A stretch of DNA of 28,316 nucleotides from Octopus sinensis (taxonomy: Eukaryota). This document shows, in pieces, positions 3,421-27,016 of the stretch (its first letter is position 1; each line of letters begins with the position of its first letter). Where the stretch lies: contig NW_021827579.1 in the NCBI RefSeq assembly GCF_006345805.1, positions 1-28,316 of the forward strand, read 5' to 3'. The notes beneath the pieces are model-generated. The model did not search any database, was not told the DNA's origin, and was given only the letters and a program-made list of their open reading frames with translations. Made by a program: the position numbers and the translations under genes.

Positions 3421-3920
3421 CGCCTCTTCAGGACTACTTTCGGGTCGGGATCTATGAACAATTTCCAGAGATCCCTGGCCTGGCAGTGCTATCGGGAAGC
3501 ATTGCCCGTTCGAGAGAAGGTCTACAGACACGGTTCAAGAAACACCGAACCGACCTGCGTGAGGTGCGGTCAGGACGATGAAACAGTCCTGCACGCACTC
3601 GTGCAGTGTCCACATATTTCAGAACTGTGGATCTTTGTCCAACGGCTGCTGTCCCGTGTGGGACGAATCCGTTTGTCAGCCGAGTCTGTCGGGAATATTG
3701 CCCTGTCACCTTCCTTTAACAGGGAAGACAAGCAGTTTTCGTCGTACTGGTGGCTATCGTGAAAGGATGTGTGTGGTGGACTCGTTTGAAAGGTTTAGAG
3801 ACAAATACTTTCTTCTTTGGCCAATCTCTCAACTTTTTCGAGTATTACTTGAAAAGGAAGGTGAGAGTAAAAAGAATAATTCTACATTATATTGTCCCCT
3901 CTGTATTAAGTCCTGTGTAG
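3421..3920 (+). mobile_element. Tx1/L1-clade LINE ORF2 C-terminal zinc-knuckle remnant
   Basis: RLFRTTFGSGSMNNFQRSLAWQCYREALPVREKVYRHGSRNTEPTCVRCGQDDETVLHALVQCPHISELW (CxxC..E...H...C motif), frameshift, then LVAIVKGCVWWTRLKG...YYLKRKVRV. Confidence 0.85.
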
Positions 3921-4142: not shown

Positions 4143-4510
4143 GTGCGTATATGTGTGTAAATGTATGTATGTATGTATGCTGTACATTGGGTACATGTGT
4201 GTCTCTGTAATCGCAAGGGTGTTGAGTAAAGAGGTCGTACTTGGAAGTGATGTCCTACATTCGCTTTTTATTTTACCAATGTAAACATTGCAATTTTGGG
4301 GAGTGCCTTGGTTGGGGGTGGCCATCTCTCTCTTTCTTCTCTCTCTCTCTCTCTAAATGTCATTACGTAGAGAACACTCCAGTGAAAGGAAAACACAAAT
4401 GAAATGTCAGTTTCTGCAAACAACAGGAAGTTATGGAGGCTTTGGGCGAACGTCTGCGATTTGATGAGGGATGGCGATAGGGGTAATTGGAGAATTGGAT
4501 GCTGCTGAGG

Positions 4511-4512
4511 TT

Positions 4513-4546
<34 letters not shown>

Positions 4547-5860
4547 GCTGTCACGGCTGTCACAGCTGTTTTACTGTTGCTCTTGCTGCTGTTGTTTCCG
4601 CAGTTGCTGCTGTTGCTCTTGTTCCCGTTCCTGTTCCCGCTGCTGTTGCTGTTGCTGCTGCTGTTGTTGCTGCTGTCGTTGCTGCTGTTATTGCTACTGC
4701 TACTGTTGTTACTGCTGTTGCTGCTGCTGGTGTGGTTGCTGCTGCTGTTTCTGTTGACGGCGCAATTGTTGCTAATGTTGCTGCTGTTGTCGCAGTTGTT
4801 GCTGCTGTTATTGTTGCGGCTGTTGTTGCTTTTGCTGTTGTTGCTGCTGATTGCCGCTGCTGTTGTCGCTGCTGTTATTGCTGCTGTTGTTGTTGCTATT
4901 GCCGCTGCTGTTGTCGCTGCTGTTGTCGCTGCTGTTATTGCTTCTGATGTTGCTGCTGTTATCGTAGTTGTTGCTGTTGCAGTTGTTGCTGCTGTTGCTG
5001 CTCCGGGTTTCTACTGTTGCCGCTGTTGCTGTCGCTGCTGTTGTCATTGTTGCTGCTGTTGTCGTGCTGTTGTTGCCACAGTTTCTCTTGCTGTTGCTGC
5101 TGTTGCTGTTGAGTGAACAGTCTTCGTCCCAGAGCTCGCAAGATGGGAGAAGTCCGAAACGTGGTCCTTTGCTATTCGTAAGACCCGCAGAAGAGAAAGC
5201 AGGTCCCCCCCCCCCCTCCCGACACCCGAGAGCATCGACGGATGGATGAATGCGCATCCAGGCTCAGCGGTTGCGTAGGAAGTCGGGGACAAGAAACAGG
5301 AAGAAAGAGCGAGAGAAAGTCGGGGCGAAAGTGTACAACAGGGGTCGCTACCCCTACCCCCTGTCGGAGCCTCGTGGAGCTTTAGGTGTTTTCGCTCAAT
5401 AGACACACACGACGCCCGGTCTGGGAATCGAAACCGCGATCCTCCGACCGCGAGTCCGCTGCTCTAACCATTGGGCCATTGTGCCTCCACTTTGCTGTTG
5501 CTGCTGTTTTTGTTATTGCTTCCGTTGCTGCTGCTGCTGTTTCTGTTGTCGCCGCAGTTGTTGCTAATGTTGCTGATGTTGTCGCAGTTGGTTTGTTGCC
5601 TGCTGCTGCTGTTTCTGCTGCTGTCATTGTTGCTGCTGTTGTTGTTTCCGTTGTCGTGCTGTTGTTGCCACAGTTTCTCTTGCTGTTGCTGCTGCTGTTG
5701 TTGTTGCTGCTGTTTCTGCAGTTGCTGCTGCTGTTGCTGTTATCACTGCTGATGCTGTTGCTGCTGTTTTTTGTTACTGCTGCTGTTGTTGCTGTTTCCG
5801 CTGCAGATGTTGTGGCTGCTCATACTGCAACTGCTGCTGTCGTTGCTGCCGACGCTGCTG
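4511..5860. repeat. (GCT/GTT)n degenerate trinucleotide array interrupted by a SINE
   Basis: The array occupies 4511-5110 and 5491-5860. Confidence 0.9.
5111..5490 (-). mobile_element. tRNA-derived SINE, apparently full length, ending in a CAA/CAG tail
   Basis: Minus-strand head GTGGAGGCACAATGGCCCAATGGTTAGAGCAGCGGACTCGCGGTCGGAGGATCGCGGTTTCGATTCCC contains box A (TGGCCCAATGG) and box B (GGTTTCGATTCC). Confidence 0.85.
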
Positions 5861-6058
5861 AATAGTGTTCCTTATTTGACCCTAAGCAGACACGGACAAA
5901 CCGCGGCCCGCAGGGACTTTCTAAATATTACACCTAACGAAAAATCGCCTTAAGTATTTTTGGTAGTGTTTCTCCATAAAGATTGCCGTGCCTGGTTTAA
6001 AGCAATCCTTCACTAAAAAAAATAGTATCGCCTCGTTTTTATATGTTAATCTTGGCTT

Positions 6059-6129
6059 TCCTACTGACGAGAGCTTTGCCAAGTAAATTATTTTATTTGC
6101 TGAAGATAGCTTGAAACCACAGTATAGGA
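6059..6129 (+). ncRNA. type I hammerhead ribozyme fold (HHR-A)
   Basis: Stem I TCCTA(6059-63)/TAGGA(6125-29); core CTGACGA; stem II GAGCT(6071-75)/AGCTT(6108-12) with an inner AGTAAAT/ATTTGCT helix; GAAAC-CACA-GTA with predicted cleavage after 6124. Confidence 0.7.
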
Positions 6130-6292
6130 TATAGAGGGTAAATGTTTTTATTTTTCATTCTCTTTCGAAATTATCCCTAATAGTGGTTTGGAGTTTAACT
6201 ACTCCTTCTTGCGGTCAGATGTCCTGTTATGGCCATCACTTGTGTGTTTAAATGTCCACTATTATGTATATATATATATAATATTATATATA

Positions 6293-12358: not shown

Positions 12359-12385
12359 ATACTTTAAAGTTACAGAAAAATTTAA

Positions 12386-12617
12386 GGCGGCGAACTGGCA
12401 GGATCGTTAGCACGCCGGGCGAAATGCGTAGCCGTATTTCGTCTGCCGTCACGTTCTGAGTTCAAATTCCGCCGAGGTCCACTTTGCCTTTCATCCTTTC
12501 GGGGTCGATAAATAAAGTACCAGTTACGCACTGGGGTCGATGTAATCGACTTAATCCATTTGTCTGTCCTTGTTTGTCCTCTCTGTGTTTAGCCCCTTGT
12601 GGGTAGTAAAGAAATAA
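12386..12617 (+). mobile_element. tRNA-derived SINE, full length
   Basis: Head GGCGGCGAACTGGCAGGATCGTTAG...GAGTTCAAATTCC, tail TTAGCCCCTTGTGGGTAGTAAAGAAATA; near-identical copy at 25926-26149. Confidence 0.9.
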
Positions 12618-12802
12618 GTATTTCGCCTTTCTTTACATTCTGAGTTCAAATTCCGACAAGGTCGACTTTGCTTTTCTTCCTTTCGGGGTCGATAAATTAA
12701 GAACCAGTTACGCACTGCTATCGATGTAATCGACTTAACCCCTTTGTCTATCCTTGTTTGTCCCCTCTGTGCTTAGCCCCTTGTGGGCAATAAAGAAATA
12801 AG
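12618..12802 (+). mobile_element. 5'-truncated tandem second copy of the same SINE
   Basis: Repeats the sequence from GTATTTCG through the AATAAAGAAATA tail. Confidence 0.85.
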
Positions 12803-13269: not shown

Positions 13270-13952
13270 AAAATATCAGAGTAAGGACATAAATGCGAAG
13301 CATTAAGGTTTTCTGCGATTTTTATGATAATATTTTAAACGGCAAATGTAATTTCATGCAACCGGTTATGTTATTGAAAAGACCGTCAGATGTAAGGACC
13401 GATGAAACAAAACCATTTTCAAATGTGTATCTATGAAAGCATTGTATTTCTGTATATAACTTTATCTTGCTCCATTCTAAACAAAACAGTTCAACGAACG
13501 GGAACGTGAAACTCTGAGTAACAAGTTTTGTGATATTTTGTGATATTTGCTGCTTTTTGATAAAGTATATATCAATATATCTGTAAAAGATTTAAAGATA
13601 TATATATCTGTATATATATATATATTATATATATATATATATGTATATATGTATATATGTATGTATGTATGAATATATGTATATACTAATAATAGAAGGG
13701 TAAAATTTATTAAGTAAATTAATTAATTAATTAATAATTCTACCAAGTAGATCGGTACGTTAAAATAACCTTTATAGGTAAAATTATCCACATAATTATA
13801 ATTAGGGTTCAGCTAACTGCTTCACCAAATACCGAAATTAGAAAAAGGAGTTAAAAATTCCTTTCCTGCTACTATAAGCATTTCCATGACGGTAAACATA
13901 CATTTTTACGAAGGCAAAGAGGAAAAACAATGAATCAACACGACCAGGATTA

Positions 13953-14015
13953 ACTACATACGCGTTTCGAGATTAAAGTAATTTAAATTTTACTTACTTC
14001 TCTCTTCAGTATAAT
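13953..14015 (-). ncRNA. type I hammerhead ribozyme fold (HHR-C)
   Basis: Minus strand ATTATA-CTGAAGA-GAGA-AGTAA-(12-nt loop)-TTACT-TTAA-TCTC-GAAAC-GC-GTA-TGTAGT. Fully canonical core, 6-bp stem I (2 G-U), G-C closing pair on stem II, palindromic ACGCGT stem III. Confidence 0.8.
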
Positions 14016-14059
14016 ATGTCCCATTTTTTATAAGATTTGAAAGTTCTATGGCCGAATAT

Positions 14060-14400
14060 GCACACTTACTTGGAAAAGGATGCGTGGCGTTCGATCATAT
14101 AATAATATAAATAATATATAAATATATGCATATATACATACATATATGTACATACCTACATATACATGTATATATACATGCATATATAGGTACAGGACAT
14201 CAAAAAAACGTTGAACACAATGAAAAACGAAGACATAAAAACAAAAACATAGAAAACGAACTTTTTTTCCGAACAACGAAAAAAAAGTCCAGAGAAACGA
14301 GACATGCAACATAAAGAATGGGAATATACCCATATATGCATGTATATATACATGTATATGTAGGAATGTACATATATATATGCATATATATATATGCATA
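14060..14400 (-). repeat. inverted copy of the 11410 family with a short inverted terminal duplication
   Basis: 14147-14187 is the reverse complement of 14332-14372 (1 mismatch in 41 nt). Confidence 0.65.
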
Positions 14401-14445
14401 TATATATTATATATATATATATATATTATATATATTATATATATA

Positions 14446-17073: not shown

Positions 17074-17192
17074 TATATATGTATGTATGTATGTATGTGT
17101 GTGTGTGTATGTACAGACAGACAGACAGACACTACAAATGTACATATAAACACAAATACACAAACATACACACACACACACATACAAATATG

Positions 17193-18049: not shown

Positions 18050-18290
18050 CAGTAGTAGTAGTATAGTGGTGGTGGTAGTAGTAGTTGTAGTAGTTGTAGT
18101 AGTAGTAGTAGTTGTTGTTGTTGTTTGTGTTGTTGTTGTTGTTGTTTGCTTCTAGGAAAAGCTGCTCTGGCTTTTTGCATTCAGTTATTCTTAATAGTCG
18201 CCATGTTGTTTTTGTTAGTTTTCGTTGTAGTAGTAGTAGTCGTGGTGGAGTTCGAAGTTGTGGTCGTTGTCCTCATCGTCGTCGTCGTCG

Positions 18291-18337
<47 letters not shown>

Positions 18338-20033
18338 TTCACCGTCACAATCTGCACCAAACCGGTGCCGCCGCCACCACCGTCACCACCACCATCGCCT
18401 CCGCCACCGCCGCGACCACCACCACTACCACCATCACCACCGCCGCCACCACCACCACCATTTCCGTCTCCTCATTCCTCTTCCTCCTCCTCCTCCACCG
18501 CCGCCTCTCTGTCTTCTTGCTTTTTCTCCTTATCTCCCTCTTCTTCACCACCATCACCACCACCACCATTTTCATGAGCATAACAGTAACGATGATGATA
18601 CTAATGATCATCATCTTCCTCCTCTTTCTCCTCTTTCTCCTCTTCAACTTCCTCCTCCTCCTCCTTCTTATATTTCTTTATCATCATCATCATCTTCTCC
18701 TTACATCTTCTTTCTCTTCTTCTTCTTTTCTTCTTCTTCATCTTCTTCTTCTTCTTCTTCTTCATCTTCAGTTCTTCATTCTATTCTTCTCCTTCTTCTT
18801 CTTCTTCTCTTTTTCTTCTTCTTCTCTTCTACTCTTCATATCATTTTCTTCTTCTTCTGCTTCCTCTTCTACACTTAATTCACTTCTTCTCTCTTCATTC
18901 TTCCTCTTCTTCTTCCTCTTCTTACATCTTTTCACCTCTTCTTTTCTCCTTATTTTCTTCTTCTCTTCTTCTTCTTTTTTTTTCTTCTTCTTCTATTCTA
19001 TTCTCTCCTTATTCTTCCTTCTCTCTTCTTTCTTTTTCTTCTTCTTATTTCTTTCTTCGTCTTCTTCTCTCTCCTTCTTTATTCGCCTTCTTCTATTATT
19101 ATTTTTCTTCTTCTTCTTCTTCTTCTTCTTCTTCTTCCGCCTTATCGTTCGCCTCCTTGCTGCAGTAATGCTTTCTCGGCCGACCGACCGACCGACTGAC
19201 CGAGCGATGAGCCGATCGATCAATCGATCAATCGATCGAATTATCGTAATTACGTGGATATGGAAAGGAGGGGTAGGAAGAAGAAGGTGAAGAAGAAGAA
19301 GAAGGAAAAGAAGAAGAAGAAGAAGAAGAAGAAGAAGACGAAGAAGAAGAAGGAGGAGGAGGAGGACAAAAGGTAAAGAAGAAAAAGGAAGGGAAGAAGA
19401 TGATGATGATGATAATGGAGAAGAAGGAGGTGAAATAGGATAAGAAAAAGGAGAAAAGGAAGAATAAATAAAATAAAAAAGAAACAAAACACCTCAAAAT
19501 GGCTACAAAAGTCAGGTATGCGTTATTCGGTTGCATGTTGAGAAAACGTACATATACACACTCATGCAGAAAGAGAGAGAAAGAGATAGAGGGAGAATGA
19601 AAGAGAGAGAAAATGAGAGATATAAAGAAAGGGGGAGTGGGAGAATGAAAGAATGAGAGGGGGAAAGAGAGAATAAAAGGGAGAGAGTGGGAGAAAGAGG
19701 AGAGAGCGAGAAATAAAGAGAGAGACAGAAGAATATTGAGAAAGGGGACTGCGAGAGTGAAAGAAAGAGAAGGAGAGAGAAGGGGAGAGATATAGCGGGA
19801 GGGGGAAAGAGAGAATGAAAGAGAGAGGGGGAGAAAAGAAGAAAAGAGAGAGGAGAGAGGAGCGAGAGGGAGAATGAAAAGAGAAAGAGGGAGTGACAGT
19901 GAATGAAAAAGAAAGAGAGTGAATGAAAAAGAGAGAGAGGGAAGGAGAGGAGAAGAGAGACTGGGAGGTAGGGGTGAGAGGAAGCATTAAAGAGAGAAAG
20001 AGAGGGAAAGACAGAAGAGAGTGATTGAGAGAA

Positions 20034-20085: not shown

Positions 20086-20219
20086 TAATAAAAATATAAA
20101 AATTGGCGGGAATGACATTGCATGACACAGACGGCTCACTTTCGACGCCAGAAGAAAAAAAAGACCAGAAAGACCGCCATGTTTGTATCAGTATGAAATA
20201 CTGATTGGGCGAAGATGTA

Positions 20220-20277
20220 ATTATTATTGCTGTTGTTGTGGTTGCTGTTGGTCGTGTTGTTGTTGTTGTTGTTGTTG

Positions 20278-20312
<35 letters not shown>

Positions 20313-20426
20313 CATTATTATTATCATTATTATTATTATTATTATCATTATATTATTATATTATTATTATTATTATTATTGTTATTATTATTATTATCAT
20401 TATTATTATTATTGTTATTATTATTA

Positions 20427-20464
<38 letters not shown>

Positions 20465-20515
20465 GTTGTTGTTGTTGTTGTTGCTGTTGTTGTTGCTGCT
20501 GCTACTGCTGCTGTT
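20220..20515. repeat. (GTT)n/(TAT)n microsatellite
   Basis: Seen directly. Confidence 0.95.
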
Positions 20516-20649
20516 GTTTCACTAGATCCAACTCAAGCAAATATGGCCGACAATAACGGCGTTTGACGTTGAGTAAAGATGACATATCAGTGATTCAGTT
20601 AAAAAAATGTATAAGTCTATCTTGGAAACACAGCAAAGAAGTACATTTT

Positions 20650-20957: not shown

Positions 20958-21350
20958 GTCTGTCTGTTTGTCTGTCTGCCTGCCTGCCTGCGTGCCTGTC
21001 TGTCTGTCTGCCTGACTGCCTGTTTGTCTGTCAGTCTGTCTGTCTGTGTGTGTATATATATGTATATATATATAGATGTGTGTATATATATATATATATG
21101 TAAACACTCACACACACACACATATACATATACATACGTACATGTATACTCACATGCACACACACACACATACACACACACACATATACGACGGTTTTTC
21201 ACAGTTTCCATAAATCAGATCATGAACAAAGTATTAGGCGTCCCGGGGCTATAGCAGAAAAAAAACTTGTCCAAGGTACCGCGCAATGGGATTGAACCCG
21301 AAACCTCGTGGTTGTTAAGCGAGCTTCTTAATCACAGAGCCATACCTGCA
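20650..21350 (-). mobile_element. tRNA-derived SINE with expanded internal microsatellite
   Basis: Minus head GGTGCAGGTATGGCTCTGTGATTAAG...GGGTTCAATCCC at 21290-21350; internal (TCTA/TCTG/AT/CA)n at 20862-21190; tail 20670-20830 homologous to 9989 and 11860. Confidence 0.7.
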
Positions 21351-22150: not shown

Positions 22151-22552
22151 ATATGCTGCCTAATAAAAGTAATAGTTTTCATTAAAATCTTCGCTAAAAT
22201 GACTGCTCAAGTTAAAGATTATAGATATTATTTCAAGATGACGGCAGATTAAATCAACACACAAATATGTTAGGTTACTGTAGGTAAGCCTCGAAGTTTT
22301 TATATCGCTGTTAAATGTCCTCGAAACTAATAATTGGAACTGAAGGAGCAATATACTTTATACGAACTTTAAAGCTTTTATCTTATTACGCAAAAAATTC
22401 CTATTACACACGCTGACATAGAACCAACGTTGAACCCTTTATTCGCAAAATTACCGAATCTGGAACTTAACTATGGTCTGTCTATAGCACTTGTTGAGAT
22501 TTACCTGACACCTTTGGGTCTCAATGACACCATTATCTTTTATATATATATA

Positions 22553-23820
22553 CAGACATGTAGGAAGTAAATAGACACCTTTAGTTTTCAAGATTTATGA
22601 TCTAAACGTCTTAATATGCTTTCAGCGATGTAGAATTTACAATGTAATTATTCTTTTTCATTCCAGGTGCCATTATATTAAACATTTGTGAAGAGTAACC
22701 ATGCCACGCACAAAAAATTCAGCAGGACTGTCAGATTTTCAAAGAAGTCGTATTGTTGGGCAATCTGAGGCTGTCTTAGCCAGCGAAAAATTGCCGAAAA
22801 TCTTCAAATTCCTCGTGCTACTGTTAATAGAATTATAGTGCAATTCAAAAGCCAAGGAAAAGAATCAACAGATTCTCGTCCCGGTCGACCTGGGCCCTCG
22901 CAAAGGAAGCTTCGCTGTTTGAAGAGAATTGTGAAAAATGAACCCCGTTTGAAGGCTTCTGACATTGCAAAACATCTAGAAGTTAGTCCAAGAACGTGTG
23001 TTACATATCTGCATAAGCTTGGGCATTATGGACGAGCAGCTAGAAGTAAACATCTCCTTCAACCAATTAATATAATGAAAAGAAAGAAATGGGCTAAGGA
23101 GATGTCAGAAAAATCCAGTTCATTTTGGGATAGATTCTCAGATGAATCCAGATTTGCATTATTTTCAGAAAGTAGACGTGTTTGGGTCTGGAGGCTTCCC
23201 AATCAAAAATTTGATTTGAAACGACTCCAACCAACTGTGAAACATGGCGGTATCTCTGTAATGGTATGGGGAGCTGTCACCAGTAATGGTCGTTCTGAGC
23301 TGATCGAATGTGACGGAACCATAAACTCTGAAAAAGACATCGAAATACTTAAGCAAGGACTACTTCCGATGTATTCACATGGTAACACAACGAAAAATGA
23401 GTTTTTATTCATGGAAGACGGGGCTCCATTCCACACAGTGAAAAGTAATCAACAATGGCTGTTTGAAAATTTGATCAAAAAGCTTCCTTGGTCGAGCCAA
23501 TCTACTGACGTGAACCCAATTGGAAATCTTTGTAGCATACAAGATAGAGCTATACCAAAAAAACTCGACAGAAACCTAAATCTAAAAATGAATTGTTTCG
23601 ATTGTTGCGTGAAAAGTGGGCTGAAATTCTACAAGAGACAATCACAAAGCTTGTCAGTTCAATGCCAAAAAGAGTTTCTGAATTAAAAACTGCAAAGGGA
23701 ATGTCAACTAAATACTAAAGTATGTAGTCCTACCTATCGAATACATTTCAATTGTTCGCTTTGCGTATTAAATAAAAGGTTTTGAAAATTAAAGGTGTCT
23801 ATTTACTTCCTGCATGTCTG
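22553..23820 (+). mobile_element. Tc1-family DNA transposon, full length (1268 bp) with both TIRs
   Basis: Left end TA-CAGACATGTAGGAAGTAAATAGACACCTTTAGTTTTCAA; right end is the reverse complement CAGACATGCAGGAAGTAAATAGACACCTTTAATTTTCAA, followed by TG (probable mutated TA target duplication). Confidence 0.95.
22701..23718 (+). pseudogene. Tc1 DD34E transposase, inactivated
   Basis: ATG at 22701 (MPRTK...), frameshift near 22772, FSDES, KHGG..VMVWG, MEDGAP, then 34 residues to NPIG (catalytic E replaced by G), second frameshift near 23565, ends GMSTKY*. Confidence 0.9.
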
Positions 23821-24014
23821 TGTATATAATTATTTTGAGGGGAACGTTGGATCTTGAGCTACAAATAACAACGTATAAATATAGGCTTAACACAGTATTT
23901 ACATGCTATTATCTATAGTTTGTCAGCTTCGAGATTCAAGTTTCCAGATCAAAATGAGTGTTATTCCATGTTTCAAAATTTATAAATTATCATGAGATCA
24001 GCAATAGACACACA

Positions 24015-24093
<79 letters not shown>

Positions 24094-24158
24094 TTATATA
24101 TATTATTATACGCACGTATGTATATGTATATACATACATGCATACATACATACATACA

Positions 24159-24194
<36 letters not shown>

Positions 24195-24440
24195 TATATG
24201 TTTTTTGTATGTATATATGTATGTATTTAACATATATGTGATATATATATAGGTTTGGTGACCCAAATCACACACACACACATATATACATATTTATTTA
24301 TGTATACATATGTGTCTATGTATATATATATTATATCTATATATCTATCTCTCTGTCTGTCTGTCTGTCTGTCTCCTCTCTCTATATATATAAATATATA
24401 TATATACATAAATATATATATATGTGTGTGTATGTATGTG

Positions 24441-24471
<31 letters not shown>

Positions 24472-24515
24472 GTATATATATATATATATATCTATGTATA
24501 TATATATATGTTATT

Positions 24516-24578
<63 letters not shown>

Positions 24579-24607
24579 ATATATATATTATTATATATAT
24601 ATATATA

Positions 24608-24964
24608 GTGACGCATTTTGCCATTTGAATATGGCTAACCCCAAGGGTGGATGCTACTGTAGTTTGTAGCCCGGAAGATATCAGTGTCAATCGACACTGG
24701 AAAAAGTATATGTATTTGTGAGGGAAACTGAATTCTCGTCGACAACTATGATTGTCACACACCGATGAAAGGTAAACATCTTGAAACTCGAGTCCGTGTG
24801 TATCATAAGTTGAAGACGGGAAGGATGACTTCCCTTCACAAATACTGATAGGGCACTGAAAGTGTGTCTATAGCCAGCTGGAGGAGATATCTTCCTGGGG
24901 CTACAAACTACAGTAGCATCCACCCTTAGGGGTTAGCCATATTTAAATGGCAAATATGTGTCAC
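24608..24964. mobile_element. fold-back (rod-like) element carrying a hammerhead at its apex
   Basis: Arms 24608-24682 / 24886-24964 are inverted, with further nested helices at 24712-24726/24830-24845, 24733-24740/24815-24822 and 24743-24752/24802-24812. Confidence 0.8.
24756..24800 (+). ncRNA. type I hammerhead-like fold with variant core (HHR-D)
   Basis: CACAC-A-CCGATGA-AAGGT-AAAC-ATCTT-GAAA-CTCGA-GTC-C-GTGTG: stem I CACAC/GTGTG with an A-C first pair, 5-bp stem II, perfect palindrome ACTCGAGT, GUC cleavage triplet ending at 24794. Confidence 0.7.
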
Positions 24965-25925
24965 GATGTGTTACCGCTACTGTTTATAACTCGCTCTGAG
25001 ATTTATCATTGTTATATATATATATATATATATATGAGAGAGGGGGAGAGAGAGAGTTGAGCAAGAAATTGTCCATAAATCAGTGCATCCAACAAAAAGT
25101 ACATCTCGGTATCTCTCTCTTCCGCCCGAGTTGCGCAAGCGCATTTTTGCCTGTCAATCTCGATGTTACATTACAAATACAAGAATCTAACGATCGGTTT
25201 TGTTGTAAACGCATAAATAACGACACAACGACTGAAAATGCAATGCTTTTAATTAAACCCCCCCACACACATACTCACAATACACACACACAACAACAAG
25301 AACAACAACAAAGCAAATTAAAAATATATAAGCAAGAAAATCGATAGATTCGAATCTAACCTCCTGTTTGCCTCTTACTACTTGAACAACAAACATGAGA
25401 AGAAAAAAAAATCACTCGTAGCATTGAACCGATATTAGAAATCAATATTTTTCTCTGGTCCATTCATGCATCTATGACCAACAAACATGTCACTTGGCGG
25501 ATGGAGAATCAAGTCCTTGTGATTCATTGTGATAGTAAGCGTATCATAGCAGAGCAGACGGCCAGAATATCGATTGTCCAGCTATAATTTTCACTATGCT
25601 ACATTGGATATGCCAACACTAAATTCACTATTGTCTGTTTGTATTTTTGTTTTGATTTATTTTTTCATATTCATGGCGTCTGTGAGTAAATTACTATAAT
25701 AATTACCGTGTAATTATTATGAATAATTTTTTTTTTAATTGCTAATATATGTCAACTCTTTTCTTTCTTCTTTAAAACATCTACTTAATGATTCATGCTT
25801 CACTGCATGAAATATGGGAATCTATGTCTCGTTCAGAAGATCTGATGAACACCGAAACGTGTCCGGAATATTCTTTTTCTGCCGAGCTCTCCGAAAGATG
25901 AAGAGAAGAGGGTTAGTTAAGTTAA

Positions 25926-26149
25926 GGCGGCGAGCTGGCAGAAACGTTAGCACGCCGGGCGAAATGCTTAGCGGTATTTCGTCTGCGTTACGTTGTGAGT
26001 TCAAATTCCGCCGAGGTCGACTTTGCTTTTCATCCTTTCGGGGTCGATAAATTAAGTTACGCACTGGGGTCGATGTAATCGACTTAATACCTATGTCTGT
26101 CCTTGTTTGTCCCCTCTGTGTTTAGCCTCTTGTGGGTAATAAAGAAATA
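25926..26149 (+). mobile_element. tRNA-derived SINE, full length, with target-site duplication
   Basis: Same family as 12386. The 15-bp duplication GGTTAGTTAAGTTAA (25911-25925) / GGTTAGTTAAATTAA (26150-26164) has one mismatch. Confidence 0.92.
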
Positions 26150-26414: not shown

Positions 26415-26658
26415 TAGTTGGAGAATTGTTAGTGAAAAAAAGCCAAACTTGGTATCTTCTATTCAGTTTTCATGCCTATCCTCAACTACGGTCGTAAAAA
26501 TTGAGCAATGACTGAAAGAATATGATCGTGGATACAAGCAGCTGAGACGGGGTTCTTCCAAATGATCTCTAAAGAAACTTACCTGAGTGGGTGCATAGCT
26601 CGAATATGTAAGAGTTTCTCCAGGCTCAGCTGCTACTTTATCTCCACTGAAAGGTCAC
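26415..26658 (+). pseudogene. RTE-clade LINE reverse transcriptase C-terminal fragment
   Basis: FYSVFMPILNYGRKN*AMTERI*SWIQAAETGFFQMIS matches the RTE-type P.L.YG.E.W.......I.AAEM.F.R.I pattern. Confidence 0.75.
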
Positions 26659-26880
26659 GGCCCGTGGCTTAGTCGTTAGGGTATTCGGCCCGCGATCGTC
26701 CGGTCATGAGTTCGATTCCTGGCAGCGTGTTGTATCCTTGAGCAAGACACTTTATTTCACATTGCTCCAGTCCACTCAGCTGGTAAAAATGAGCTGTACC
26801 AGTAATTCAAAAGGGCCAGCCTTGTCACATTCTGTGTTATGTTGATTCTCTCTGAGAACTACGTTAAGGGTATGCGTGTC
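26659..26880 (+). mobile_element. tRNA-derived SINE (12075 family), 3' truncated
   Basis: Head GTGGCTTAGTCGTTAGGG...GAGTTCGATTCC; body shared with the 12075-12358 copy. Confidence 0.85.
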
Positions 26881-27016
26881 TGGCAGAATCGTTAACACGC
26901 CGGGCAAAATGCTTAGCAGTATTTCGTCTGCCGTTACGTTCTGAGTTCAAATTCCGCTGAGGTCGACTTTGCCTTTCATCCTTTCGGGGATCGATAAATT
27001 AAGTACTCGCACTGGG
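26881..27016 (+). mobile_element. partial SINE of the 12386 family
   Basis: TGGCAGAATCGTTAACACGCCGGGC...GAGTTCAAATTCC...CGCACTGGG. Confidence 0.85.

What the first reader, a model, noticed from the sequence alone, without database searches (positions are those of the whole stretch)
24608..24964. 357-nt rod-like fold-back element with a hammerhead at its tip
Seen: nested pairing from the ends inward - about 75-bp arms (24608-24682/24886-24964), GTATTTGTG-AGGGAA/TTCCCTTCACAAATAC, TTCTCGTC/GACGGGAA, CAAC-TATGAT/ATCATAAGTTG, then CACAC/GTGTG, which is stem I of HHR-D. The whole element is therefore an extension of the ribozyme's stem I. The arms are imperfect and the middle segments differ, which suggests an old or selected structure rather than a fresh inversion. 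Inference: a viroid/retrozyme-like rod RNA, or a MITE-like element that captured a ribozyme. A transcript would also be a long dsRNA substrate for ADAR or Dicer.
Basis: partly seen in the sequence, partly recalled or inferred. Interest (0 to 1): 0.85.

Follow-up and report, generated by a model that had tools for sequence, protein, structure and literature searches.

The report
Fold-back repeat with decayed hammerhead tip
A 357-base stretch in a repeat-rich animal genome folds back on itself and carries a damaged, probably dead copy of a self-cutting RNA motif (hammerhead) at its tip; it looks like an old mobile-element insertion, not a working viroid-like RNA.

Summary
Window 24608-24964 is a very strong fold-back (RNA MFE -201 kcal/mol, z -23).

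The fold-back is not one continuous palindrome. It has three tiers:
- near-perfect 75-nt outer arms;
- unrelated middle segments;
- a 69%-complementary inner hairpin.

Both strands fold about equally well, so the symmetry is at the DNA level.

The hammerhead scores 18.8 bits, below Rfam's cut-off of 34. It has several defects: C at core position U4, an A.C mismatch at 2.1-1.1, A-U in place of G10.1-C11.1, and a competing fold that is 7.4 kcal/mol more stable. The element occurs once in the window, with one ribozyme on one strand and no tandem copy.

Best reading (about 0.4): a decayed hammerhead-bearing retrozyme or Penelope-type unit inserted into a (TA)n microsatellite, with the inverted 5'-truncated partner copy that is usual for Penelope-like insertions. 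Rivals are a MITE with an internal hammerhead hairpin, or a chance hammerhead look-alike.

No other copy could be retrieved, because the host genome is not in any searchable collection. The family-level tests (copy number, one or two arms, covariation) therefore remain undone.

The parts
24383..24607 (.). Imperfect (TA)n microsatellite, about 115 units, abutting the left end of the element. Candidate insertion target.
   Evidence: TRF; sequence
24608..24682 (+). Left outer arm, 75 nt. In the preferred model it is the inverted, 5'-truncated copy of the unit's 3' end. In the MITE model it is the left TIR.
   Evidence: Inverted repeats at 90-97%. 73 matches, 2 mismatches and 4 gap columns against the right arm, with 0 of 500 shuffles as good. 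100% paired in the MFE structure.
24683..24706 (+). Left middle segment. Not complementary to its right-hand counterpart. It holds its own small hairpin, AGUGUC/GACACU (24683-24698).
   Evidence: 253 of 500 shuffles align as well
24707..24755 (+). Inner left arm: an imperfect extension of hammerhead helix I, with a UGU bulge at 24753-24755 where loop 1 would lie.
   Evidence: MFE helices. 69% complementarity, 0 of 500 shuffles as good. The inner hairpin has z -5.9 on the + strand and -5.6 on the - strand.
24756..24800 (+). Type-I hammerhead-like motif. Helix I is 24756-24761 / 24795-24800 (5 bp plus the A24761.C24795 mismatch). The core is CCGAUGA at 24762-24768, with U4 replaced by C at 24763. 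Helix II is 24769-24772 / 24779-24782 (4 bp, closing pair A-U) with loop UAAACA. G12-A14 are 24783-24785. Helix III is A24786-U24793 and C24787-G24792 with the palindromic loop UCGA. C17 is 24794, so the predicted cleavage site lies between 24794 and 24795.
   Evidence: Rfam RF00163: 18.8 bits (gathering score 34), E 0.032 in a 171-nt search, gapless over model positions 1-45. Not reported at gathering threshold.
24801..24850 (+). Inner right arm, pairing with 24707-24755.
24851..24885 (+). Right middle segment, 35 nt, unrelated to the left middle segment. It holds its own small hairpin (24851-24856 / 24864-24869).
24886..24964 (+). Right outer arm, 79 nt. In the preferred model it is the 3'-terminal region of the direct copy. 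In the MITE model it is the right TIR.
24965..25012 (.). 48 nt of unique, non-repeat sequence between the right arm and the next (TA)n tract. Possibly the one-sided 'tail' seen at Penelope-type insertions, or simply original flank.
   Evidence: Sequence; TRF; no significant match elsewhere in the window
25013..25035 (.). Perfect (TA)11.5. Possibly the other half of the interrupted microsatellite.
   Evidence: TRF

Best explanation
This is a single, old insertion of a hammerhead-bearing non-autonomous repeat of the retrozyme / Penelope-like-element (PLE) lineage, sitting in a (TA)n microsatellite.

Proposed layout (inferred):
- The direct copy is about 24683-24964. It consists of an imperfect 144-nt hairpin whose tip is a canonical metazoan type-I hammerhead (helix I extended by the unit's own sequence), followed by a 79-nt 3' region.
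- The left 75 nt (24608-24682) are an inverted, 5'-truncated copy of that same 3' region, laid down at insertion. PLE-mobilised insertions often carry such a copy.
- This explains why the outer arms are nearly identical and end at the same nucleotide, while the middle segments are unrelated and the inner hairpin is only 69% complementary.
- The 48 nt to the right would be the one-sided tail.

State of the ribozyme (inferred): it is very probably inactive in this copy. It has C at U4, an A.C mismatch at 2.1-1.1 and A-U at 10.1-11.1. Its 2-bp helix III needs a second copy to form a dimer, and no second copy is present. A competing fold is 7.4 kcal/mol more stable. The locus therefore has no ribozyme function now. 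If transcribed, it would simply give a long hairpin RNA with a near-perfect duplex of about 70 bp.

Shown: the structure, the motif and its defects, the microsatellite context, and that the element occurs once in the window.
Inferred: the retroelement origin, the insertion mechanism and the inactivity.
For: 1. The motif matches the canonical metazoan type-I hammerhead point by point: helix I of 6 positions followed by an internal loop, helix II of 4 bp with a 6-nt A-rich loop, helix III of 2 bp capped by a 4-nt palindromic loop (ACUCGAGU), and a GUC cleavage triplet. It aligns without gaps to RF00163. The architecture is as described in PMC4209133.
2. A hammerhead-like tip is rare by chance on a fold-back: 2.2e-4 to 3.5e-5 in simulation.
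3. Such hammerheads are known from PLE pLTRs and from retrozymes of 150-450 bp, GC below 50%, with highly self-paired RNAs (PMC7229834; 2026 preprint). This unit is 282-357 nt, 43% GC and 78% paired.
4. PLE insertions often carry an adjacent inverted 5'-truncated copy, a 30-40 bp tail at one end, and a bias for microsatellites including (TA)n (PMC8557442). Here, (TA)115 abuts the left end and (TA)11.5 resumes 48 nt beyond the right end.
5. The three-tier complementarity (outer 97% excluding gaps, middle none, inner 69%) fits two copies of one 3' end flanking a unit that has its own imperfect hairpin. It does not fit a single inverted duplication.
6. Cephalopod genomes, which I suspect to be the host group, are reported to hold hundreds of Hammerhead_1 hits (235 in the giant squid; PMC6962438).
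Against: - The hammerhead is sub-threshold (18.8 against 34 bits) and carries three departures from conserved positions. These include the highly conserved G10.1-C11.1 pair, so it could be a look-alike.
- No second copy of the unit, tandem or dispersed, lies in the 28-kb window, and none could be retrieved elsewhere.
- No PLE reverse transcriptase or GIY-YIG remnant was seen among the ORFs scanned.
- The 48-nt 'tail' is longer than the reported 30-40 bp and may just be flank.
- Two 75-nt arms ending at the same nucleotide are equally what a DNA transposon's TIRs look like.
Confidence: 0.4

Rival explanations
1. It is a MITE or foldback-type non-autonomous DNA transposon. The 75-bp arms are terminal inverted repeats recognised by a transposase, and the 203-bp interior holds a hairpin with a hammerhead relic, either captured or inherited. 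It moves as DNA and the ribozyme plays no part in mobility.
For: - The terminal repeats are near-perfect, end at the same nucleotide on both sides (GTGAC...GTCAC), and enclose an unrelated interior. This is the classic MITE layout.
- The element is small and non-coding.
- Both strands fold equally well, so the symmetry is at the DNA level.
- The left flank ends in TA, and the window holds other DNA transposons, such as a Tc1-like element at 22548-23827.
Against: - No target-site duplication is discernible: TA on the left against GA on the right, and no match at 3, 4, 8 or 9 bp.
- The termini match no superfamily consensus I could recognise and are unrelated to the neighbouring Tc1-like TIRs.
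- No MITE carrying a hammerhead turned up in the literature search.
- There is no second copy in the window.
Confidence: 0.25
2. The hammerhead is a chance look-alike. The locus is an ordinary inverted repeat or hairpin-forming repeat of whatever origin. Its tip happens to carry GAUGA...GAAA...GUC in a hammerhead-like arrangement, with helix I supplied for free by the palindrome.
For: - The score is well below Rfam's cut-off, and the hit is seen only with lax filters on a short stretch.
- There is one core mismatch (U4C), a mismatch at 2.1-1.1, and no G10.1-C11.1 pair.
- A descriptor that allows one core mismatch hits 0.14 times per random window.
- The other hammerhead-like strings in the window are noise: 11.4 bits at E 7.5, or no hit at all, and their contexts are unstructured with z between -1.8 and +0.9.
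- The left half of the tip is marginally alignable to the reverse complement of the right half; 19 of 500 shuffles do as well.
Against: - The simulated probability of such a tip on a random fold-back is 2e-4 or less.
- The alignment to the 45-nt model is gapless.
- Features outside my descriptor also fit the canonical animal hammerhead: a 4-bp helix II, a 6-nt YAAAYA loop 2, a bulge at the loop-1 position, and the 8-nt palindrome ACUCGAGU.
Confidence: 0.25
3. It is a working retrozyme or viroid-like rod RNA. The locus would be transcribed, self-cleaved and circularised into a rod-shaped RNA of about 357 nt whose helix I is the rod.
For: - The size, GC content and high self-pairing fit retrozyme circRNAs.
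- Joining the two ends gives GTCAC|GTGAC, a palindrome that could close the far end of a circle.
- The ribozyme is masked by an alternative pairing, as in viroids.
Against: - There is only one cleavage site, so no unit-length RNA can be excised. There is no tandem copy.
- There are core defects at U4 and at 2.1-1.1. Core mutations are generally taken to abolish biological function (PMC3088659).
- Helix III is of the dimer-dependent type and has no partner.
- The 75 nt of uninterrupted pairing are unlike viroid-type rods.
- There is no strand asymmetry in G.U pairs.
Confidence: 0.05
4. It is an assembly or library artefact: a fold-back chimera created during sequencing.
For: Inverted duplications next to long (TA)n tracts are a known kind of artefact (general knowledge).
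Against: - The arms differ by 2 substitutions and 3 indels.
- The middle segments are unrelated and of different length (24 against 35 nt).
- The inner hairpin is only 69% complementary.
An artefact would give an exact palindrome with an abrupt junction.
Confidence: 0.03

Closest known systems
Canonical metazoan type-I hammerhead ribozyme (Rfam RF00163; the Schistosoma Sm-alpha and newt satellite 2 type)
   Same: It has type-I topology and a gapless 45-nt alignment. Helix I has 6 positions followed by an internal loop. Helix II has 4 bp with a 6-nt A-rich loop. Helix III has 2 bp with a palindromic 4-nt loop (the dimer type). The GUC cleavage triplet and G12-A13-A14 are intact.
   Different: The score is below the family cut-off. 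Position U4 is C, the 2.1-1.1 pair is an A.C mismatch, and the 10.1-11.1 pair is A-U. There is a single copy with no neighbour to dimerise with. Helix I continues into a fold-back of about 150 bp.
Metazoan non-LTR retrozymes (Cervera and de la Pena 2020, PMC7229834)
   Same: The unit lies within 150-450 bp, has GC below 50%, carries a type-I hammerhead, and gives a highly self-paired predicted RNA in which the rest of the unit closes helix I.
   Different: It is not tandem. It has only one ribozyme, so no excision is possible. The hammerhead lies in the middle of the genomic unit. It has 75-nt near-perfect terminal inverted repeats. The ribozyme is masked by a competing fold, whereas most metazoan retrozymes leave it free.
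Penelope-like element insertions: pLTRs with hammerheads, inverted 5'-truncated partner copies, one-sided tails, microsatellite targets (PMC8557442, PMC4209133)
   Same: The inverted repeat ends at a common terminus. The site is a (TA)n microsatellite. Extra non-repeat nucleotides lie at one end only. The hammerhead has a small palindromic helix III.
   Different: There is no RT or GIY-YIG ORF or recognisable pLTR nearby. The whole structure is only about 400 bp. The tail is 48 nt rather than 30-40. Homology to any PLE was not shown.
MITEs and foldback DNA transposons
   Same: It is short and non-coding, has long terminal inverted repeats around an unrelated interior, and shows strong DNA-level hairpin potential on both strands.
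   Different: No target-site duplication was found, the termini match no known superfamily, and copy number is unknown. I found no report of a MITE carrying a hammerhead.
Hammerhead viroids (Avsunviroidae) and viroid-like circular RNAs
   Same: It has a rod-like fold, and the hammerhead is sequestered by an alternative pairing.
   Different: It is genomic DNA in an animal, the ribozyme is of one polarity only, the duplex is far more perfect than in a viroid rod, and there is no evidence of a circular RNA.

Membership tests
Hammerhead ribozyme type I (RF00163) | Score at or above Rfam's gathering threshold (34 bits) | tested here: not met
   18.8 bits. No hit at gathering threshold.
Hammerhead ribozyme type I (RF00163) | Three helices around the core, with helix I open (type-I topology) | tested here: met
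   Gapless alignment to model positions 1-45. Helices are 5 bp plus 1 mismatch, 4 bp, and 2 bp.
Hammerhead ribozyme type I (RF00163) | Conserved core: C3 U4 G5 A6 N7 G8 A9, G12 A13 A14, A15.1-U16.1, and H17 | tested here: not met
   All are present except U4, which is C at 24763.
Hammerhead ribozyme type I (RF00163) | G10.1-C11.1 pair closing helix II | tested here: not met
   The pair is A24769-U24782. PMC4209133 calls this pair highly conserved.
Hammerhead ribozyme type I (RF00163) | Self-cleavage at H17 | not testable with these tools
   This needs in-vitro transcription of monomer and dimer constructs.
Metazoan non-LTR retrozyme | Tandem repeats of 150-450 bp, each with a type-I hammerhead | tested here: not met
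   The unit occurs once in the window and has no direct repeat of itself.
Metazoan non-LTR retrozyme | GC below 50% and a highly self-paired unit RNA | tested here: met
   GC is 43%. 78% of bases are paired and z is -23.
Metazoan non-LTR retrozyme | Expressed as circular and linear unit-length RNAs | not testable with these tools
   No transcriptome data are available.
Penelope-like-element type insertion | Adjacent inverted 5'-truncated copy sharing the 3' terminus | tested here: inconclusive
   The arms end at the same nucleotide, and complementarity stops abruptly 75 nt in. This is compatible with the feature, but TIRs would look the same.
Penelope-like-element type insertion | Insertion into a microsatellite, with a 30-40 bp tail at one end | tested here: inconclusive
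   (TA)115 lies on the left. 48 unique nt followed by (TA)11.5 lie on the right. No empty site is available for comparison.
Penelope-like-element type insertion | Sequence homology to a PLE pLTR, or a nearby RT/GIY-YIG ORF | tested here: not met
   No such domain was found among the ORFs scanned. No PLE sequence library was on hand, so pLTR homology was not tested.
MITE / foldback DNA transposon | Terminal inverted repeats | tested here: met
   75 and 79 nt: 73 matches, 2 mismatches, 4 gap columns.
MITE / foldback DNA transposon | Target-site duplication of fixed length | tested here: not met
   The flanks are ...TATATATA on the left and GATGTGTT... on the right. There is no match at 2, 3, 4, 8 or 9 bp. 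The microsatellite context weakens this test.
MITE / foldback DNA transposon | Many dispersed copies with the same termini | not testable with these tools
   The host genome is not in any collection. A SINE present at least 4 times in the window found no candidate at all in the protein collection, so the negative searches say nothing about copy number.
Viroid-like rod RNA | Circular RNA with ribozymes serving rolling-circle processing | tested here: not met
   There is one hammerhead-like motif on the + strand only and a single cleavage site. Circularity itself cannot be tested.

The most novel reading that the evidence does not exclude
The element is one copy of a real family in which a hammerhead sits at the tip of a long hairpin bounded by terminal inverted repeats. 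That would be either a DNA-mobilised (MITE-like) carrier of a ribozyme, or a retrozyme whose genomic unit is delimited at the far loop of its rod. In either case the ribozyme would cut a long hairpin transcript at its apex, for instance opening it for Dicer or ADAR processing or for circle formation. Neither arrangement has been described.
Probability: 0.12. Interest if true: 0.75.

Novelty: new member of a known kind. Interest (0 to 1): 0.3.

Why it matters
If the preferred reading is right, this is one more fossil of the hammerhead-bearing retroelements (retrozymes and Penelope-like elements) that litter invertebrate genomes. It would be a useful worked example of how a Penelope-style inverted partner copy can make such an insertion look like a MITE or a viroid-like rod.

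It would matter more if genome-wide copies showed a family with both arms and an intact hammerhead in the consensus. That would be the first DNA-transposon-like or hairpin-delimited carrier of a self-cleaving ribozyme in an animal. It would also link ribozyme cleavage to long-hairpin RNA processing.

Tried and rejected
1. External copies by DNA pattern:
- A 23-mer of the arm gave 0 hits in viral, metagenome and prokaryote-genome contigs.
- A degenerate 23-mer of the arm's outer part gave 0 hits in metagenomes.
- A 24-mer of the hammerhead gave 0 hits in viral contigs.

2. External copies through spurious ORFs:
- Exact look-up of the 78-aa ORF and of the neighbouring transposase ORF found nothing on record.
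- A word-indexed search with the 78-aa ORF found nothing.
- An exhaustive HMMER search with the 51-aa left-arm ORF gave 0 hits.

3. Control for these negatives: a peptide from a SINE present at least 4 times in the window found no word-sharing candidate. The host genome is therefore absent from the collection, and the negatives say nothing about copy number.

4. Host-related DNA through the Tc1-like transposase:
- One 1.4-kb ENA contig is 93.6% identical to the window's Tc1 element.
- A 115-kb ENA contig has only 66% identity and none of the window's SINEs, so it comes from another species. I abandoned this route.

5. Relation to the neighbouring Tc1-like element: its TIRs (CAGACATGYAGGAAGTAAATAGACACC) are unrelated to the arms. 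Rejected.

6. RNA-level selection judged from strand asymmetry of wobble pairs: 4 against 3, uninformative.

7. Other hammerheads in the window as family context:
- 6058-6130 scores 11.4 bits at E 7.5.
- 13952-14016 on the - strand gives no hammerhead hit.
- None of these sits in a structured context. I treat them as noise.

8. Nested insertion into a perfect palindrome with a GATATC 'duplication': GATATC is self-complementary, so it carries no independent weight. I noted it but did not adopt it.

9. The 48-nt tail as a partial third copy of the arm: only an 8-mer is shared. Rejected.

10. The mir-297, mir-466 and mir-3149 hits across the window are microsatellite artefacts.

Full report
**What is there.** The window is eukaryotic, 35% GC, and packed with microsatellites and transposon debris. 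Positions 24608-24964 form an exceptionally stable fold-back. As RNA, the + strand reaches -201 kcal/mol against -90.7 +/- 4.8 for dinucleotide shuffles (z -22.9). The - strand reaches -182 kcal/mol (z -17.6).

**Anatomy.** The fold-back is not one continuous palindrome. It has four parts:
- The outer arms (24608-24682 and 24886-24964) align with 73 matches, 2 mismatches and 4 gap columns, and are 100% paired.
- The next segments inward (24683-24706 and 24851-24885) have different lengths, 24 and 35 nt. They are not complementary at all; 253 of 500 shuffles align as well. Each forms its own small hairpin.
- The inner arms (24707-24755 and 24801-24850) are 69% complementary, with 0 of 500 shuffles as good. 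They form a bulged hairpin with z about -5.9 on the + strand and -5.6 on the - strand.
- The tip (24756-24800) is the hammerhead-like motif.

A single inverted duplication would diverge uniformly along its length, so this pattern rules out a simple fresh inversion. It also rules out a sequencing fold-back artefact.

**The hammerhead.** On a short stretch, Rfam's Hammerhead_1 model aligns to 24756-24800 on the + strand without a gap over all 45 positions. The score is 18.8 bits, E 0.032.
- This is far below the family's cut-off of 34 bits.
- Nothing is reported at gathering threshold.
- The hit is even lost by the filters when 416 nt are searched.

The architecture nevertheless matches what Cervera and de la Pena describe for canonical animal type-I hammerheads (PMC4209133):
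- helix I of six positions followed by an internal loop (a UGU bulge at 24753-24755);
- helix II of 4 bp with a six-base A-rich loop;
- helix III of two pairs capped by a palindromic tetraloop, so that A15.1 to U16.1 reads ACUCGAGU, the dimer-forming type;
- a GUC cleavage triplet, with the predicted cut between 24794 and 24795.

The defects are:
- C instead of U at core position 4 (24763);
- A-U instead of the highly conserved G10.1-C11.1 pair.

Forcing the catalytic fold costs 7.4 kcal/mol relative to the competing pairing, which sequesters C3-A6 against the helix III strand. Core changes are generally taken to abolish biological function (PMC3088659). A helix III of this type needs a second ribozyme copy, and there is none. 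I conclude by inference that this copy does not cleave.

**Is the motif chance?**
- A descriptor allowing one core mismatch hits 0.14 times per random 28-kb window. A bare motif of this quality is therefore not remarkable.
- The other hammerhead-like strings in the window are noise. They score 11.4 bits at E 7.5, or give no hit, and their surroundings are unstructured.
- Placed at the tip of a fold-back, the picture changes. In 200,000 simulated degenerate fold-backs, only 44 had such a tip, and only 7 at this motif's quality.
- Several canonical features lie outside my descriptor.

Taking these together, I put the odds at roughly three to one that the motif descends from a real animal hammerhead. 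Chance remains a live rival at about 0.25.

**RNA-level or DNA-level symmetry?**
- Both strands fold about equally well.
- Transition mismatches that would be G.U on the + strand number 4, against 3 for the - strand.
- The outer 75 nt form an almost uninterrupted duplex.

Nothing here indicates selection on a transcript of one polarity. The symmetry is what DNA-level inverted repeats give.

**Context.**
- An imperfect (TA)115 tract runs right up to the left end.
- On the right, 48 nt of unique sequence are followed by a perfect (TA)11.5.
- No target-site duplication is recognisable.
- The element is unique in the window.
- It is unrelated to the neighbouring Tc1-like transposon at 22548-23827, whose TIRs read CAGACATGYAGGAAG....
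- No reverse transcriptase or GIY-YIG endonuclease remnant was found in the ORFs scanned, apart from a LINE-type zf-RVT fragment at 3454-3762.

**Best explanation (confidence about 0.4).** Animal type-I hammerheads are known from the pseudo-LTRs of Penelope-like elements and from their non-autonomous derivatives, the retrozymes. Retrozymes have units of 150-450 bp, GC below 50% and highly self-paired RNAs. Penelope-type insertions characteristically show an inverted 5'-truncated copy next to the direct copy, a 30-40 bp tail at one end, and a preference for microsatellites including (TA)n (PMC8557442).

Reading the locus this way explains the three tiers:
- The direct unit is 24683-24964: a bulged hairpin with the hammerhead at its tip, plus a 79-nt 3' region.
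- The left 75 nt are the inverted, truncated copy of that same 3' region, made in the same event. They are therefore nearly identical to it and end at the same nucleotide.
- The 48 nt to the right would be the tail.

The structure and context are shown. The origin and mechanism are inferred.

**Rivals.**
- *A MITE or foldback DNA transposon with 75-bp TIRs and an internal hammerhead hairpin (0.25).* It fits the termini equally well. However, it lacks a target-site duplication and a recognisable superfamily signature, and it has no precedent in the literature searched.
- *A chance look-alike on an ordinary inverted repeat (0.25).*
- *A working viroid- or retrozyme-like RNA (0.05).* A single cleavage site, core defects, no dimer partner and no tandem copy all speak against it.
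- *An assembly artefact (0.03).* The unrelated middle segments and the imperfect arms exclude it.

**What could not be done.** I could retrieve none.
- Arm and hammerhead patterns found nothing in the viral, metagenome or prokaryote-genome collections.
- ORF-based searches with pieces of the element found nothing.
- As a control, a peptide from a SINE that occurs at least four times in this window found no candidate at all. The host genome is simply not in the protein collection, so these negatives say nothing about copy number.
- The only related DNA reached was a 1.4-kb ENA contig 93.6% identical to the neighbouring Tc1-like element.
- From memory, and unverified, the SINEs resemble those of cephalopods. 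The giant squid genome is reported to contain 235 Hammerhead_1 hits (PMC6962438).

**Verdict.** The structural observation is right and well above chance.
- The locus is most likely a dead, single-copy relic of a hammerhead-bearing mobile element whose inverted terminal duplication makes it look like a rod.
- It is not an active rod-like RNA.
- It is a new member of a known kind and of modest interest.
- The unexcluded novel reading is a true family of hairpin-delimited or MITE-like ribozyme carriers. It would be worth a genome-wide BLAST, which would settle the matter quickly.

Noticed in passing
window 22548-23827: Tc1-like DNA transposon with about 30-bp TIRs (CAGACATGYAGGAAGTAAATAGACACC) and a degraded transposase ORF (22838-23686; HTH_Tnp_Tc3_2 and DDE_3). 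It is 93.6% identical over 1287 nt to an ENA metagenome-assembly contig (ERZ17090559 NODE_252314).
   Followed up: partly
window about 25920-26075, 26880-27012, 12385-12590 and 12555-12770: At least four copies of one tRNA-derived SINE with a B-box-like GAGTTCAAATTCCGC. A second tRNA-like SINE lies at about 26655-26800 (GGCTTAGTCGTTAGGG...GAGTTCGATTCCTGGC). From memory they resemble cephalopod SINEs; this is unverified. ARAGORN calls no tRNA here.
   Followed up: partly
window 3454-3762: ORF with a zf-RVT domain (E 5.8e-9). It is the C-terminal fragment of a non-LTR retrotransposon reverse transcriptase.
   Followed up: no
window 13952-14016 (- strand) and 6058-6130 (+ strand): Two further hammerhead-like strings: CUGAAGA...GAAACGCGUA with a palindromic ACGCGU, and CUGACGA...GAAACCACAGUA. 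Rfam gives no hit for the first and 11.4 bits (E 7.5) for the second. Their surroundings are unstructured.
   Followed up: yes
window-wide, e.g. 24121-24226, 21065-21133, 14119-14406, 17084-17191: Dozens of sub-threshold Rfam hits to mir-297, mir-466, mir-3149 and mir-1277. All fall on (TA)n, (CA)n or (TACA)n microsatellites and are repeat artefacts, not miRNA genes.
   Followed up: yes
window 24677-24682 and 24886-24891: Both near-perfect outer arms end inward in the self-complementary hexamer GATATC. It therefore reads as both an inverted and a direct repeat around the 203-nt interior. It could be read as a 6-bp duplication from a nested insertion, but it carries no independent weight.
   Followed up: partly
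window 18112-19290, 4471-5865 and 20183-20566: Long low-complexity trinucleotide-repeat tracts that produce spurious ORFs of up to 392 aa in several frames. These are not genes.
   Followed up: no
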